Assembly (NCBI RefSeq): GCF_022045235.1
Contig: NW_027266268.1
Location: 28,024,001 to 28,088,000, forward strand
DNA length: 64,000 nucleotides
DNA from: Haliotis cracherodii
Lineage: Eukaryota
Direction: 5' to 3'
Notes under the pieces: generated by a model
Told to the model about the DNA's origin: nothing
The model's database searches: none
What the model saw: the letters and a program-made list of their open reading frames with translations, nothing else
Position numbers and translations under genes: made by a program
Shown: piece by piece, positions 53,246 through 61,293 of the stretch
Layout: each line of letters opens with the position of its first letter
Numbering within the stretch: the stretch's first letter is position 1

Positions 53246-53348
53246 CTACTCCATGACAAATGTGTTGCAGTCGATCATAAACTCGTCAAACACGAACTTT
53301 ACCATAGCATGGCCACAGTTTGAGGCCACCTCCTTGTAAGTACCAAAC
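53246..53348 (-). CDS. Secreted Cys-rich protein A, last coding exon (FGTYKEVASNCGHAMVKFVFDEFMIDCNTFVME*); spliced product 111 aa
   Basis: ttctcag acceptor phase 2; homologous to protein B exon 3; not in ORF track. Confidence 0.8.
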
Positions 53349-53365
53349 CTGAGAACAGGAACAAG

Positions 53366-53625
53366 AGTGAGTGAGTTAGGTTAACGCCGCTTTTAACAGT
53401 ATTCCAGTTATATCATGGCGTGTCAGCTTAATGTGGGAGCAAAGCCCGAAGAGATGCAGGTCTCAGACGTTTACCACTTCGGTGAAACCCACGAGCACGG
53501 GCATGGTGCTGGTATGGGCAAACCGGGATTCGAACCCACGATAATAGGTTTCTGGCGTGCCCAAGGGACGCACATCTGCATAGCTTATTGTGGTGCCTTA
53601 GACGCCAGGGCCACCCGTGCCTTCA
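53366..53625 (-). mobile_element. SINE family C inserted in polypyrimidine tract of gene A
   Basis: TSD aca(g/a)gaacaaga. Confidence 0.85.
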
Positions 53626-53787
53626 CAAGAACAAGACACTTTAGTAGTGATAAGTATTTGTGTTTCTAGCCTCAATGACATTTCCATGAGTTGCTACACA
53701 AAAGAAATATTTCTGCTTCTGTATTGATTTAAATGAGTAAGTGAGTGAATTTGGTTTAACGCCGTTTTGAAAAGTTGTATCACTGAA

Positions 53788-53955
53788 AGTGAGTGAGTGA
53801 GTGAGTGAGTATAGTTTTACGCCGGTTTTAGCAGCATTCCAGCAATATCACGGCGGGGGACACGAGAAATGGGCTTCACACATTGTACCCATGTCGGGAA
53901 TCGAACCCGGGTCTTCGGCGTGACGAGCGAACGCTTTAACCACTATGTTACCCAT
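53788..53955 (-). mobile_element. SINE family A
   Basis: Family match; tatcactgaa on both flanks. Confidence 0.85.
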
Positions 53956-54178
53956 ATCACTGAATGACAGAAGTGATGCAGGTCTTACACGCTTTCCACT
54001 TTTGTGAAACCCACGAGCAAAGGTATGGTGTTGACAGTCTTAGAAACATAATCAGGGCGAACCTGGATTCGAACCCAGAACTCCGCACAAGGAATTCCAG
54101 CGCCTTAGACAACTGGGCCACCTGTGTTCCCGTATTCATTAAAACTCCAGATTTTATAACATTGTCAAAGTGGCTTAC

Positions 54179-54314
54179 CCGGAGAATCTTAGGACGTTGT
54201 TGACACACTGTACCGCAACACCGCAGGTGTCGACGTCGCCGACGACTTTGAGGCCTGTCTGTGGGTCATTCACGTACCCGATGCCTACTCTGCTGCAGGA
54301 CTCGCGGAGGCGGT
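54179..54314 (-). CDS. Secreted Cys-rich protein A, coding exon 2 (DRLRESC...DVDTCGVAVQCVNNVLRFSG)
   Basis: ctttag acceptor, GG|gtaagc donor, phase 1/2, GC-rich. Confidence 0.85.
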
Positions 54315-54594
54315 CTAAAGAGGGATAGTGAGCATGGAGAATAAATGAAGAATTAAGTGCATGAACAGTATACTCAGGGCAGATTAGACAGCCTTTGAAC
54401 ATGACAAGTGAATCCAGTTACACACTGCCACACATTATCATAGAACTGGGCTGGGATTCAATTTCGAAAAGGTTATTGTTTTTCGACACTCTCAAACCAC
54501 TTTTTAACACATACAATATTATTCATTAATAACCAAACCTTTCTCCAAAATATTCTTGCCCCTTTCACCAAGAGGATGAAAAAAGCAGTTTGTG

Positions 54595-57140: not shown

Positions 57141-57935
57141 ATGTATGAGTGAGAGTCAAACCCGGTTATTTTGGCCAACCTGGGTCCACGTGGCTACTCA
57201 ACGTCCGTGCATCAGGATAGAAGTCTTAGTTAGGTTTACCAACGAAAATACTCAAGTTACTATAATCAAGTCAGAAATAGTAACTTCTATCATAATTTTT
57301 GTCAAAGCTTTTTATTGCCATCTTATAAGGTACAGACATGACCGATTATTCAACTTGTGTCTCATGAGAACCCTGTGCAGTGCAGTAAAATAGTTATTGT
57401 GTATGCATTTTATGATATATAACATTGCGAGTTAAACATAAACAAAAGTTAAAATAACACCAAAACAGTCGACCTTGAAGATTTCAGAATTGTTTCAGTT
57501 ATTCAGTTCTCTCGATATTCAGGTAGTAGTTTATTAACTAGTTCGTGACTAGACTTTGAATCCAACATTTCGAGACAACCGAGGTTGACAGTATAACCAG
57601 TTGTTCTCAAATGACACTTGACACAAGCATGATGTCAGATCTGTACTCTACAACACACAGGTCGGACCACAGATGTGTGTTCACAAAGCCCCACAGCCAA
57701 TAGCCCTCGACGGTATTTCAAAACTATCATATACGGGATTGCTCAGACTCTAACGTTTTAAAACTGAAAGATACCTTTTGGTAATCAAAGTCACTTGAAT
57801 GACATCTTGTAAATGACTTCTTGCCTGCCAAGATCGAAATTATTTCAAGAACGTAAATGTCGTTTTATATTAATTGAAGATGTGGCTGTCCGTCCGTGGC
57901 GTGCGAACACAACCTATGGTCCGTGTGTATGTTCT

Positions 57936-58185
57936 TCAGTGAAGGCCTTGCGCATTTCGGGCCGCGATGACCCTCCTGAGCTCAGCCTCGAGCTCTTCCT
58001 CGGACAATGTCGTGACGTCAGGGGGATGTCTCTGGGAGTAGTTCAGCTTGTACATACTCTCTAGTACCTTCCTCATGTGCGTGTTGCGTTCTATCATACA
58101 ATCAGACGCATCCACGTTCAAACCGAACTCAATCAGGGCATAGTCACAGTGAGGCAGTACGCGGACACACTCAGTGGGGAAGCTC
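57936..58185 (-). CDS. Secreted Cys-rich protein B, last coding exon; spliced product 156 aa
   Basis: ttgcag acceptor phase 2; SFPTECVRVLPHCDYALIEFGLNVDASDC...NAQGLH*. Confidence 0.8.
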
Positions 58186-59795
58186 CTGCAAGGTGATATA
58201 TATATATATATAGATCATTACTTTGGTAGTCACAGTGTACGTGACACACTCAGTGCTCCAGCAAGGTGACATATACGGAGTATTACATGGGTGAGTCACA
58301 GTGTACGTGACACACTCAGTGGGGAAGCCCCTGCTAGGTGATATATAGAGAGTATTACATGGGCGAGTCACAGTGTACGTGACACACTCAGTGGGGAAGC
58401 CCCTGCTAGGTGATATATAGAGAGTATTACATGGGCGAGTCACAGAGTACGTGACACACACAGTGGGGAAGCCCCTGCTAGGTGATATATAGAGAGTATT
58501 ACATGGGCGAGTCACAGTGTACGTGACACACACAGTGGGGAAGCCCCTGCTAGGTGATATATAGAGAGTATTACATGGGCGAGTCACAGTGTACGTGACA
58601 CACTCAGTGGGGATATGGAGAGAGTATTACATGGGCGAGTCACAGTGTACGTGACACACTCAGTGGGGATATGGAGAGAGTATTACATGGGTGAGTCACA
58701 GTGTACGTGACACACTCAGTGGGGAAGCCCCTGCTAGGTGATATATAGAGAGTATTACATGGGCGAGTCACAGTGTACGTGACACACACAGTGGGGAAGC
58801 CTCTGCAAGGTGATATATAGAGAGTATTACATGTGCGAGTCACAGTGTACGTGACACACACAGTGGGGAAGCCCCTGCTAGGTGATATATAGAGAGTATT
58901 ACATCGGCGAGTCACAGTGTACGTGACACACACAGTGGGGAAGCCCCTGCTAGGTGATATATAGAGAGTATTACATGGGCGAGTCACAGTGTACGTGACA
59001 CACTCAGTGGGGATATGGAGAGAGTATTACATGGGTGAGTCACAGTGTACGTGACACACTCAGTTGGGAAGCCCCTCCTAGGTGATATATAGAGAGTATT
59101 ACATGGGTAGTCACAGTGTACGTGACACACTCAGTGGGGATATGGAGAGAGTATTACATGGGTAGTCACAGTGTACGTGACACACTCAGTGGGGATATGG
59201 TGAGAGTATTACATGGGTAGTCACAGTGTACGTGACACACTCATTGGGAATATGGAGAGAGTATTACATGGGTAGTCACAGTGTACGTGACACACTCAGT
59301 GGGGATATGGAGAGAGTATTACATGGGTAGTCACAGTGTACGTGACACACTCAGTGGGAATATGGAGAGAGTATTACATGGGTAGTCACAATGTGCGTGA
59401 CACACTCAGTGGGGATATGGAGAGAGTATTACGTGGGTGAGTCACAGTGTACGTGACACACTCAGTGGGGATATGGAGAGAGTATTACGTGGGTGAGTCA
59501 CAGTGTACGTGACACACTCAGTAGGGATATGGAGAGAGTATTACGTGGGTGAGTCACAGTGTGCGTGACACACTCAGTGGGGATATGGAGAGAGTATTAC
59601 GTGGGTGAGTCACAGTGTACGTGACACACTCAGTAGGGATATGGAGAGAGCACTGCATGGGTAGTCACAGTGTACGTGACACTCATGCAGGGTGATATAT
59701 GGGGAGTTGACACACTCAGAGGGGAAGCTCCTATAAGGTGATATATAGAAAGGATTAAAAGGGTAGTCACAGTGAGGTAGTACGTGACACAGTAA
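58186..59795. repeat. 72-bp and 55/56-bp minisatellite filling gene B intron, derived from the intron/exon 3 junction
   Basis: Unit shares atatcacct.gcag|g.gcttccccactgagtgtgtc with the real junction. Confidence 0.92.
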
Positions 59796-59811
59796 TATAA
59801 ACATCCTTGAC

Positions 59812-59932
59812 CTGCAGAACTGGAGCTCGTTGTTGCCGCTGCATGTGACGGTTGTGTCGCAGGTGTCCATGTCATCGTTCTTTTCCAGGGGATACTTCAG
59901 TTTGGTTCGTCCACAAATCTCCCCGTTGTCCT
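59812..59932 (-). CDS. Secreted Cys-rich protein B, coding exon 2 (KDNGEIC...DMDTCDTTVTCSGNNELQFCR)
   Basis: catcag acceptor, AG|gtcaag donor, phase 1/2 as in gene A. Confidence 0.8.
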
Positions 59933-61193
59933 CTGATGTCAACAAAAGCAGATTGTATAGGTCCTTATACACATTGCACACCATCTTCTATCATCCCGGG
60001 GATTCTATCGCCATTCCATCAGGATTAATACCCTGAACACATTCGCTGTCGTGGATTCCTTCGAGGAGTGACCTCATGATCTTAAACTATCTTATTATTC
60101 ATTACCTTCCAACAAGAATTGTCTCGCAAAGGTATTTTGATTGGACGGCTATTTTAGCGCCATGTCAGTGGAAATGACCCCCAAAAACGTCACTATAGTA
60201 GCGAATTGGTTCATTGTATTTGCGATGGTACAAATGAGCTACTGGATAATTGAGAATGACGACAACATAAGCATCCAAGCACATTAGTACGGACCCGGGG
60301 CCAATGTTATAAAGCGAGTATAGCATTCCTATCGTTGGTCTAGGTGAAAGTACGTGGGTGTTAAGACGGAGAGCAACATTGTTTCATGTTTTGGTTTGGT
60401 GCTGAGGGTGGGAATCCTGTCAGAATCGTTAAGAGGAATAGATGACTTTAAATGCCTTCGGTGAAAGTTCCCAATGATAACCAGATGCATATATAACATG
60501 ATCCTGAAAATAGCACAGTATCTTTAACAATACACTTGAAATGAATTATAGTTCATAGGAATGTATATTTGGGTGGTTTATGCCTGGTTGACACGAGAAT
60601 AACTGAACACCATATCTAATATTCAACTTTAGAGGAAACAAGTTGATAAATAAAGGAAAGGCATTCGTTAAATCAAAGTGCCGCGTTACTTGCAATTCTT
60701 AATCAATCACATTTTGATGTCGAATGATATACAGTTTTTTGTATCAAAGATGAGTATATCAATAATACGTTTTAACAATGATGTAACAAGAAAACATGGC
60801 TGAGATCAGCTAGCGATATTTAAATTTGGATGGAATTACTGTGACAAAGGCCACACAAAATAGCCTCCTTAAACTTTTTGAACGATCCTCGTGATCTTGA
60901 GTTTCTTTCATCATCACCACAACTAGACTTATTTGAGTCTCTCTCATCGTAACCACAGCTAGACTTGAACATCTCTTCGATTAGCCTTACCAACATATAA
61001 GCCATTCTGAACATTTCTATACAAAATACAACTATTCCACAAAAAGGTTCAGTAGTAACTGACATTTCAAACTGTCACATACGAATTAATATGTTACATA
61101 ATCCGAATCATGCAGCAGGGACCCTTGTGTAAAGACATATAATCACCAACATTGTGTTAGCACATGTCTGGTGCAAATATAACCTGTACCTAC

Positions 61194-61293
61194 TGTGTAC
61201 AAATACATCGAAGAACTCCAGTGAACACTCCGCGGAGACTCTGTATGTCCCTTCCAGCAGCAGCATCACCATGACGACAGTCCACAGCTTCAT
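61194..61293 (-). CDS. Secreted Cys-rich protein B, coding exon 1 (signal peptide MKLWTVVMVMLLLEGTYRVSA)
   Basis: Acceptor tttcag at 61313, acaATG, A|gtaggt donor phase 1. Confidence 0.8.

What the first reader, a model, noticed from the sequence alone, without database searches (positions are those of the whole stretch)
53246..61293. Tandem pair of unrecognised secreted Cys-rich proteins with identical gene architecture
Seen: splicing gives A = MQLVCSVFLVLMLATVGLA|NICNLNRMDVVVSDRLRESCSRVGIGYVNDPQTGLKVVGDVDTCGVAVQCVNNVLRFSGFGTYKEVASNCGHAMVKFVFDEFMIDCNTFVME (111 aa) and B = MKLWTVVMVMLLLEGTYRVSA|ECSLEFFDVFVHKDNGEICGRTKLKYPLEKNDDMDTCDTTVTCSGNNELQFCRSFPTECVRVLPHCDYALIEFGLNVDASDCMIER...NAQGLH (156 aa). 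They share the framework C-x16-C-x17/23-C-x5-C-x19/22-C-x15-C and motifs CxLxxxDVxV, DxDTCxxxVxC, NNxLxF, CxxAxxxF. Introns fall at the same codons with the same phases (1 and 2), and both have a 5'-UTR intron. Sequence is otherwise very divergent. B has one extra Cys pair. I cannot assign a known family. Inference: a fast-evolving lineage-specific disulfide fold (signalling or pheromone, immune, gamete or shell/mucus protein). The ORF track shows only fragments of it.
Basis: partly seen in the sequence, partly recalled or inferred. Interest (0 to 1): 0.8.

Follow-up and report, generated by a model that had tools for sequence, protein, structure and literature searches.

The report
Abalone-only pair of small secreted proteins
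Two neighbouring abalone genes encode related small, probably secreted, disulfide-bonded proteins with no detectable relatives outside abalones and no known function; public annotation already predicts both genes.

Summary
Genes A and B lie on the minus strand. Each has three coding exons, GT..AG introns and intron phases 1 and 2. The exon translations tile two RefSeq proteins named Haliotis cracherodii: P0006 (111 aa) and P0008 (183 aa). Intron-free contigs from public runs cover the exons. One contig joins A exon 1 to exon 2 exactly, and the intron and intergenic bins are empty.

A and B are true but old paralogues:
- BLASTP between the H. rufescens orthologues gives E 3e-6.
- Exon-wise shuffle tests give z 9.5.
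- Six Cys are shared, and the intron places and phases are the same.

No family could be assigned:
- Pfam gave no match for 7 of 8 proteins.
- PDB sequence and fold searches found nothing significant.
- A profile search of 1.84 billion representatives found only the family itself.
- The genome holds only these two copies.

"Fast-evolving" fits A only: H. cracherodii versus H. asinina is 58 of 87 identical. B's Cys domain is 76 of 83 identical.

Function and tissue remain unknown. A's 5'-UTR intron is unverified. B's upstream exon carries an in-frame ATG that RefSeq treats as coding.

This is an ordinary lineage-restricted gene pair for secreted proteins, of modest interest.

The parts
54914..55010 (-). 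Gene A, first coding exon (ATG at 55010-55008). It encodes the signal-peptide-like residues 1-19 and the first Cys of the domain, and ends in phase 1. The exon extends upstream to at least 55042.
   Evidence: X5 contig 9 maps 54914-55042 and joins to 54314.
54179..54314 (-). Gene A, second coding exon (residues 33-78, three Cys), phase 1 in and phase 2 out.
   Evidence: Contigs of X4 and X5 start mapping at 54177, with 141 and 774 further letters lying off the stretch.
53246..53348 (-). Gene A, last coding exon (residues 78-111, two Cys, stop at 53248-53246). The 3' UTR continues below 53246.
   Evidence: This exon was outside the stretch laid with reads.
63030..63091 (-). Gene B, upstream exon. 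Its in-frame ATG at 63091-63089 starts the 183-aa RefSeq form. The donor is AG|GTGAAT at 63030/63029. A second, out-of-frame ATG lies at 63095.
   Evidence: exon peptide = P0008 residues 1-20, split codon R21. Not covered by reads.
61194..61312 (-). Gene B, exon with the ATG of the 156-aa form (61293-61291). It encodes the signal-peptide-like segment and the first Cys. The acceptor AG is at 61314-61313, and the exon ends in phase 1.
   Evidence: P0008 residues 22-60.
59812..59932 (-). Gene B, middle coding exon (four Cys, including one of the extra pair), phase 1 in and phase 2 out.
   Evidence: Depth in bins 59700-60099 in X4, X5 and X7.
58186..59811 (-). Gene B intron 2, filled by a 55/56/72-bp tandem array. 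The array holds copies of the acceptor plus the first bases of exon 3.
   Evidence: 8 copies of 'CAG + 25 nt' with at most 5 substitutions, all keeping the AG. Depth is zero over 58300-59699 in 4 of 4 runs.
57936..58185 (-). Gene B, last coding exon. It holds the end of the Cys domain (three Cys) and a 52-residue Cys-free tail predicted helical. The stop is at 57938-57936, and the 3' UTR reaches at least 57300.
   Evidence: Contigs X4 57300-58138, X5 57625-58184, X7 58046-58184.

Best explanation
A and B are two functional, expressed genes of a black-abalone-type genome. They arose by an old tandem duplication.

Each encodes a cleavable N-terminal signal peptide followed by one acidic domain of about 85-90 residues. 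The domain is predicted to be all beta and is probably held by three disulfides in A and four in B. B adds a 52-residue helical, Cys-free tail.

The family has only these two members per genome and is detectable only in Haliotis.

My committed reading is that both are exported and act outside the cell as small disulfide-locked binding or matrix proteins, not as enzymes. B is the constrained member and A the faster-changing one.

- Shown: gene structure, splicing, paralogy, and the lack of any detectable family.
- Inferred: secretion, disulfide bonding, and an extracellular binding role.
- Unknown: tissue and partner.
For: **Gene models.**
- The introns are canonical and have equal phases.
- The exons tile the RefSeq proteins P0006 and P0008.

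**Transcription and splicing.** Intron-free contigs were found in 3 of the 4 runs for B and in 2 of 4 for A, with an exact A exon 1-exon 2 joint. The fourth run, X9, showed only low depth in A's exon-2 bin, and no contig piece there was listed.

**Paralogy.**
- BLASTP E 3e-6.
- Shuffle z 9.5.
- 16 invariant columns over 7 sequences, among them 4 Cys. The other two shared Cys are present in all 6 sequences that cover them.

**Old duplication kept in the genus.**
- A and B orthologues exist in H. rufescens, H. asinina and H. cracherodii, plus a B fragment in H. rubra.
- Accession numbers are consecutive in H. rufescens and H. asinina.
- The two loci share no DNA similarity.

**Constraint.** B's domain is 76 of 83 identical between H. 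cracherodii and H. asinina.

**Only two copies.** Six exon matches at E <= 2.7e-5. The other six matches have E >= 0.89 and all carry stops.

**Secretion (read from the sequence).**
- Hydrophobic N-termini, with small residues at -1 and -3 before the first Cys-bearing segment.
- An even number of Cys in the mature parts, 6 and 8.
- Acidic mature parts, pI about 5.

**Predicted structure.** Beta strands at matching places in both models, and two helices in B's tail.
Against: - No signal-peptide predictor was available, so the cleavage sites are my reading.
- The RefSeq model for this species starts B 27 residues upstream. That start would bury the hydrophobic segment behind a long N-region.
- In X4, the only listed contig over A exon 2 runs on into intron 1, and no exon 1-exon 2 joint was seen in that run.
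- The tool labels the runs 'RNA?' as a guess, and the contigs give neither strand nor level.
- Both structure models are of low confidence, pLDDT 58 and 53. The beta fold and disulfides are therefore not established.
- No tissue, proteomic or functional datum exists.
- How many non-Haliotis vetigastropod proteomes the databases hold is unknown to me, so 'Haliotis-only' is a statement about the databases.
Confidence: 0.72

Rival explanations
1. A and B are very divergent members of an already described small Cys-containing extracellular domain family. Candidates are single-domain von Willebrand factor C (SVWC), beta-microseminoprotein/PSP94, ZP-N or beta-gamma-crystallin-like domains. In that case the family is not new, only beyond the reach of sequence methods.
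For: - Atlas feature search: the best clusters for P0001 are SVWC (0.80, 0.79), and a mollusc beta-microseminoprotein-like cluster scores 0.75.
Against: - Pfam hmmscan at E <= 10 gave no family for 7 of 8 proteins. The eighth, P0004, gave only a sub-threshold TetR hit.
- The PDB profile search gave only E 0.15 and 0.36, both to a viral NS1 over B's tail.
- The models searched with were of low confidence, so neither a match nor a miss means much.
Confidence: 0.15
2. The pair are rapidly evolving reproductive or recognition proteins (gamete, pheromone or immune) under positive selection.
For: - A's mature part is only 58 of 87 identical between H. cracherodii and H. asinina, and 86 of 92 identical to H. 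rufescens.
- In A exon 2, the X4 contig differs from the window at five listed places. Four change the residue (E37D, S40N, R41K, V42I, the H. rufescens states) and one is silent.
- That is 5 differences in 136 exon bases. Eight are listed in the 268 adjacent intron bases, and two further differences of that contig are not listed (tables 3 and 8).
- Contigs are present in some runs and absent in others of the same coded organism, X5 against X9.
Against: - B's Cys domain is strongly conserved, 76 of 83 identical.
- The family has stayed at two copies with 1:1 orthologues, rather than expanding or turning over.
- The four changes in A are all conservative, and the counts are far too small for a selection test.
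- The mature proteins are acidic, unlike cationic antimicrobial peptides.
- The tissue is unknown.
Confidence: 0.15
3. B is made mainly from the upstream ATG (the 183-aa form). It is then not a classical secreted protein. The extension would turn the hydrophobic segment into an internal anchor or change its targeting, so A and B would work in different compartments.
For: - The upstream exon is spliced in frame, and RefSeq uses it as coding in H. cracherodii and in H. rufescens isoform X1.
- The 20 exon residues are identical between the two species.
Against: - H. rufescens also has isoform X2, which starts at the downstream ATG.
- The H. asinina N-terminal extension is unrelated in sequence. 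The extension is therefore not conserved, as a functional peptide would be.
- The in-frame upstream ATG has a T at -3 and at +4. An overlapping out-of-frame ATG 4 bases upstream has G at -3 and +4 (my reading).
- A has no such extension.
- Automatic annotation picks the longest ORF (my own knowledge of such pipelines).
Confidence: 0.12
4. The A-B resemblance is chance between two unrelated small Cys proteins that happen to be neighbours.
For: Single-exon tblastn in the window did not pair A exons with B exons at E <= 50. The loci show no DNA similarity.
Against: - BLASTP of the full orthologues gives E 3e-6.
- 0 of 3000 shuffles reach the summed exon score, even with the Cys fixed in place.
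- The intron places and phases are the same.
- A single profile recovers all six exons and nothing else in 1.18 Gb.
Confidence: 0.02

Closest known systems
Single-domain von Willebrand factor type C proteins (SVWC, Pfam PF15430)
   Same: Small secreted invertebrate proteins of about 100-110 residues, with a signal peptide and one Cys-stabilised, beta-rich domain. This was the top lead of the Atlas feature search, at 0.80.
   Different: No Pfam match at E <= 10. The Atlas score is at chance level by the tool's own calibration. SVWC has eight Cys as I recall it (not from a call), against six in A. The Atlas clusters are arthropod ones.
Beta-microseminoprotein / PSP94 (Pfam PF05825)
   Same: A small secreted all-beta disulfide protein of similar length. 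A mollusc cluster of this name appears at rank 16, score 0.75.
   Different: No Pfam match, and the score is below any useful level. PSP94 has ten Cys as I recall it (not from a call), so the Cys framework differs.
ZP-N domains (for example Xenopus ZP2-N2N3, PDB 8rkg)
   Same: An extracellular beta-sandwich module of about 100 residues with conserved disulfides. That such modules build abalone egg-coat proteins is my recollection, not from a call. Weak fold rows were found.
Lineage-restricted secreted proteins of mollusc secretomes (mantle, mucus, gametes)
   Same: A signal peptide, a small size, a few conserved Cys, no relatives outside a narrow clade, and tandem paralogues. That such genes are common in molluscs is general knowledge as I recall it. 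I read no paper on it here.
   Different: This is a description, not a family. It implies no shared ancestry or mechanism.

Membership tests
SVWC (PF15430) | Match to the Pfam profile at or near the gathering score | tested here: not met
   hmmscan at E <= 10 gave no SVWC row for any of the 8 proteins.
SVWC (PF15430) | Eight-Cys framework of the single VWC domain (recalled, not from a call) | tested here: inconclusive
   A has 6 Cys and B has 8 in the mature part. I did not align them against a family alignment obtained from a tool.
Beta-microseminoprotein / PSP94 (PF05825) | Match to the Pfam profile | tested here: not met
   No PSP94 row at E <= 10 for any of the 8 proteins. Atlas score is only 0.75.
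ZP-N domain | Significant structural superposition on a solved ZP-N domain | tested here: inconclusive
Any family with a solved structure | Sequence-profile match to a PDB chain | tested here: not met
   The profile of 5 family members against 177,635 PDB sequences gave two hits, E 0.15 and 0.36. Both are to a viral NS1 and lie over B's tail.
The Haliotis A/B family itself (as defined here) | Hydrophobic N-terminal segment followed by the framework C-x16-C-x17/23-C-x5-C-x19/22-C-x15-C, with the D-T-C, N-N-x-L-x-F and D-C motifs | tested here: met
   Alignment of 7 proteins: 16 invariant columns, including D61, T62, C63, C69, N71, N72, L74, F76, C89, D104 and C105.
The Haliotis A/B family itself (as defined here) | Three coding exons with introns of phase 1 and phase 2 at homologous places | tested here: met
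   Intron 1 falls in aligned columns (D33 of A, K61 of P0008). Intron 2 falls one codon plus two bases after the conserved F (F76 of A, F99 of B), with a one-residue indel just downstream.

The most novel reading that the evidence does not exclude
The shared domain is a previously undescribed disulfide-locked beta fold that arose in the abalone lineage. The two products work as a pair. B would be the conserved scaffold, using its helical tail to oligomerise or dock. A would be the fast-changing partner that tunes specificity, for instance in gamete, larval-settlement or shell-matrix recognition.
Probability: 0.1. Interest if true: 0.55.

Novelty: new member of a known kind. Interest (0 to 1): 0.3.

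Why it matters
If the reading is right, abalones carry a private two-gene family of exported proteins that has been kept side by side since before H. asinina and the Californian species split. One copy is tightly conserved and the other changes quickly.

Such genes are candidates for abalone-specific biology, such as the shell, mucus, settlement or fertilisation. H. cracherodii, the species named in the matching RefSeq records, is a threatened species as I recall. Even so, many such orphan secreted proteins exist in molluscs, and nothing yet points to a particular role.

The practical gain is small:
- The public gene models are correct.
- The 156-aa start of B is the plausible secreted form.
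- Sequence and fold searches are exhausted, so only expression, proteomics or a solved structure will say more.

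Tried and rejected
**Searches that found nothing useful**
- tblastn of each exon peptide against the window found no third copy. The best non-self hit had E 0.058.
- Own-genome searches with single exons and with the family profile found only A and B.
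- blastn of the A locus against the B locus gave no match at E <= 1. A's 5' exon could therefore not be found by similarity.
- Pfam, PDB sequences, Foldseek pdb on both models, VIA wide on model A and two Atlas searches gave nothing above chance.
- The structure models were poor, with pLDDT 58 and 53 from only 5 sequences. I draw no fold from them.
- Model B was not searched with VIA, and neither model was searched in the viral library.

**Papers**
- Five searches were run: general terms, three LOC identifiers and two peptide strings.
- I saw the listings only. None of the listed papers concerns these loci, and I read none.
- Supplementary tables of abalone proteome or transcriptome papers were not asked for.

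**Calls that were irrelevant or empty**
- The bacterial-type promoter and terminator scan of B's upstream region is irrelevant for an animal gene, and I discard it.
- ARAGORN found no tRNA gene in 52700-57200. My impression that the intronic repeats are tRNA-derived is therefore unsupported.
- The search of earlier findings by words gave nothing.

**Readings I rejected**
- Antimicrobial peptide: the mature parts are acidic.
- Prohormone: the dibasic sites in B's tail are not followed by a conserved amidation signal (my reading).

**Not possible**
- The tissue of expression could not be found, because the runs are coded.
- No signal-peptide predictor was available.

Full report
**What is there**

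The window is G000:C5:28024001-28088000 of a 1.18-Gb assembly in 80 contigs. Two genes lie on the minus strand.
- Gene A has coding exons 54914-55010, 54179-54314 and 53246-53348.
- Gene B has coding exons 61194-61293, 59812-59932 and 57936-58185.
- All four coding introns start with GT and end with AG. In both genes the first intron is phase 1 and the second is phase 2.

I checked them piece by piece against database proteins that the tools returned.
- The three A exon peptides occupy residues 1-32, 34-77 and 79-111 of P0006. The split codons give D33 and G78.
- The B peptides occupy 22-60, 62-100 and 102-183 of P0008. The split codons give K61 and R101.
- A fourth, upstream exon (63030-63091) gives residues 1-20 and the split codon R21.

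P0006 and P0008 are RefSeq records named 'uncharacterized protein [Haliotis cracherodii]', XP_071096927.1 and XP_071096111.1. The window therefore comes from that species or one with identical proteins. The 156-aa form of B equals H. rufescens isoform X2 in extent (P0007).

**Is it transcribed and spliced as claimed?**

The look-up of sequencing runs listed no run on record as RNA, only runs guessed to be RNA with small shares of the sampled words. I laid four of the 22 listed runs (X4, X5, X9, X7) on window 54100-60099 at 88% likeness.
- **A, spliced.** X5 contig 9 (1043 letters) lies on 54177-54314 and 54914-55042 with one joint, 54314 to 54914. The skipped ends CT..AC read GT..AG on the minus strand. 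This is A intron 1 to the base. A further 774 letters of the contig lie beyond 54177, on the intron 2 side.
- **A, unspliced.** X4 contig 1 (605 letters) also stops at 54177, with 141 letters off the stretch. It runs unspliced through 54315-54582. In that run intron 1 is retained, and no exon 1-exon 2 joint was listed.
- **B.** X4 contig 8 covers 57300-58138. X5 contig 15 covers 57625-58184 with 167 more letters elsewhere. X7 contig 23 covers 58046-58184 with one mismatch and 78 more letters elsewhere. The exon 2 bins (59700-60099) have depth in these three runs.
- **Empty bins.** Bins 58300-59699 (B intron 2) and 55900-56899 (intergenic) are empty in all four runs. This is what RNA gives and DNA does not.
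- **Gaps in the evidence.** The B exon 2-exon 3 joint itself was not among the 15 joints shown; 148 were not shown. A exon 3, B exon 1 and B's upstream exon lay outside the stretch.
- **A's 5'-UTR intron.** It stays open. The contig ends at 55042, three bases past the candidate acceptor (AG at 55041-55040), with two unmatched letters. That fits a junction but does not show one.

**Are A and B related?**
- Single exons do not find each other by tblastn, and the loci share no DNA similarity.
- The full H. rufescens orthologues align at E 3e-6, with 32 of 109 identical.
- Exon by exon, the window's own peptides score z 6.5, 6.8 and 4.0 above 3000 shuffles. The summed z is 9.5, with 0 of 3000 shuffles reaching it. 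With the Cys held in place, z is 8.1 and again 0 of 3000.
- In the 7-protein alignment, 16 columns are invariant. The mature domains of P0006 and P0008 are 28 of 80 identical.
- Intron 1 falls in the same alignment column in both genes. Intron 2 falls one codon plus two bases after the conserved Phe in both, with a one-residue indel at the start of exon 3.

Paralogy is secure. A has six Cys in the mature part and B has eight. B's extra pair brackets the exon 2/3 junction.

**How far does the family reach?**
- Single-exon searches of 5.8 billion proteins found only Haliotis proteins. A has orthologues in H. rufescens (P0001) and H. asinina (P0002). B has orthologues in H. rufescens (P0003) and H. 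rubra (P0004, a fragment).
- A profile search added H. asinina B (P0005). All 5 proteins at E <= 1, among 6587 candidates, were Haliotis.
- hmmsearch of the 5-sequence profile against 1,835,955,588 representatives gave 2 proteins at E <= 0.001, both family members.
- In the window's genome the profile finds the six coding exons (E 7e-46 to 2.7e-5). The six other rows have E >= 0.89, and all carry in-frame stops.
- Accessions of A and B are consecutive in H. rufescens and H. asinina, and each pair sits on one contig. From this I infer, but did not see, that the tandem arrangement is conserved.

**What is it like?**
- Pfam gave nothing at E <= 10 for 7 of 8 proteins. P0004 gave only a TetR row of 13.2 bits against a cut-off of 25.
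- PDB sequences gave E 0.15 and 0.36, to a viral NS1 over B's tail.
- AlphaFold2 on the 5-sequence alignments gave low-confidence models. A has pLDDT 58 and pTM 0.43, with eight strands after an N-terminal helix. B has pLDDT 53, with strands at corresponding places plus helices 134-147 and 163-182.
- The Atlas leads are SVWC at 0.80 and a mollusc beta-microseminoprotein-like cluster at 0.75; for B they are unnamed arthropod clusters at 0.80 or lower. All are at the level the tool reports for shuffled proteins.

I therefore cannot file the family anywhere. Given the poor models, I also cannot claim a new fold.

**Rates of change**

Between H. cracherodii and H. asinina:
- A's mature part is 58 of 87 identical.
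- B's Cys domain is 76 of 83 identical.
- B's tail is 37 of 52 identical.

Against H. rufescens, A is 104 of 111 identical and B is 177 of 183.

The X4 contig carries the four H. rufescens residue states in A exon 2 (E37D, S40N, R41K, V42I) plus one silent change. That is 5 listed differences in 136 exon bases. The adjacent 268 intron bases have 8 listed differences, and two more of the contig's 15 are not listed. A's exon 2 thus changes about as fast as its intron, but the numbers are tiny. No dN/dS was possible because orthologous DNA could not be fetched.

**Mechanism: shown and inferred**
- **Shown:** two expressed, spliced, paralogous genes that have been conserved in the genus.
- **Inferred from the sequence:**
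  - Both begin with a hydrophobic segment followed by small residues at -3 and -1 (GLA|N in A, VSA|E in B). This is a signal peptide by the usual rule, but it was not run through a predictor.
  - The mature parts are 92 aa and 135 aa, acidic (pI 4.96 for both; B domain 4.35), with an even number of Cys. They are probably disulfide-bonded extracellular proteins.
- **My commitment:**
  - Exported: about 0.8.
  - Non-enzymatic binding or matrix proteins: about 0.6.
  - B is the constrained member, and its helical tail serves oligomerisation, docking or a propeptide role. This is a guess.
  - No preference among shell or mucus, reproduction, and immunity that I can defend.
- **A complication:** B's upstream exon has an in-frame ATG at 63091, used by RefSeq. 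An overlapping out-of-frame ATG at 63095 sits in a better context. The H. asinina extension is unrelated, and H. rufescens has a short isoform. I therefore take the downstream ATG as the productive start, with about 0.12 for the alternative.

**Novelty and verdict**

The gene models are already public as 'uncharacterized protein' in four Haliotis species. No paper in the searchable library names the three LOC identifiers or holds the two peptide strings I searched; supplements were not seen.

The family is uncharacterised and apparently restricted to the genus. It is one more lineage-restricted gene pair for secreted proteins, a common kind in molluscs by general knowledge. Interest is modest at 0.3. 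The bolder reading, a new fold with A and B working as a conserved-plus-variable pair, is not excluded, and I give it about 0.1.

**Surroundings**
- Elsewhere in the window are exons of an MFS transporter (minus strand, about 28.3-32.0 kb) and a PAN-domain exon (about 20.0-20.5 kb, plus strand). Neither has an evident link to A or B.
- B's intron 2 is almost wholly a tandem array derived from the exon 3 acceptor region.
- The four runs show no contig on the array.

Noticed in passing
window 58186-59811 (minus-strand gene B, intron 2): The intron is filled by 55/56/72-bp tandem units. These repeat the 3' splice acceptor and the first bases of exon 3. Eight copies of 'CAG + 25 nt' have at most 5 substitutions, and all keep the AG. 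Nineteen copies of a 15-nt exon core are also present. No contig of the four runs lies on 58300-59699, so the decoy acceptors are not visibly used.
   Followed up: partly
window 63089-63095 (minus strand, B upstream exon): There are two overlapping ATGs. The first (63095) is out of frame with the main ORF and has G at -3 and +4. The second (63091) is in frame and starts the 183-aa RefSeq form, but has T at -3 and +4. This may be an overlapping upstream ORF that damps translation of B.
   Followed up: no
window 54315-54582 (A intron 1): An X4 contig (605 letters) runs from A exon 2 unspliced into intron 1 while being spliced at intron 2. The intronic reading frame 54175-54402 is open and in frame with exon 2, because the acceptor G replaces the last base of exon 1. 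A retained-intron transcript would therefore encode a form without a signal peptide.
   Followed up: no
window 54700-54899, 55100-55499, 56900-57099; also 52800-52990: These are interspersed repeats with very high summed contig depth in all four runs, up to about 4.5e5 at 56900-57099. By eye, the 56969-57100 element recurs at about 52800-52990 downstream of A. ARAGORN finds no tRNA gene in 52700-57200.
   Followed up: partly
window 54583-54643 and 57091-57155: Two microsatellites, (GTGC)n in A intron 1 and (CCAA)n between A and B. The read tool skipped both as repeats.
   Followed up: no
window 28334-29311 and 31562-31999 (minus); 20014-20490 (plus): Open frames with Pfam MFS_1 matches (E 1.4e-11 and 5.8e-6) and a PAN_1 match (E 1.9e-5). 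These are neighbouring genes with no evident link to A or B.
   Followed up: partly
window 46753-47118 (minus): An open frame with a weak Tc3-type transposase HTH match (E 0.0046, below the cut-off). It is probably a transposon relic.
   Followed up: no
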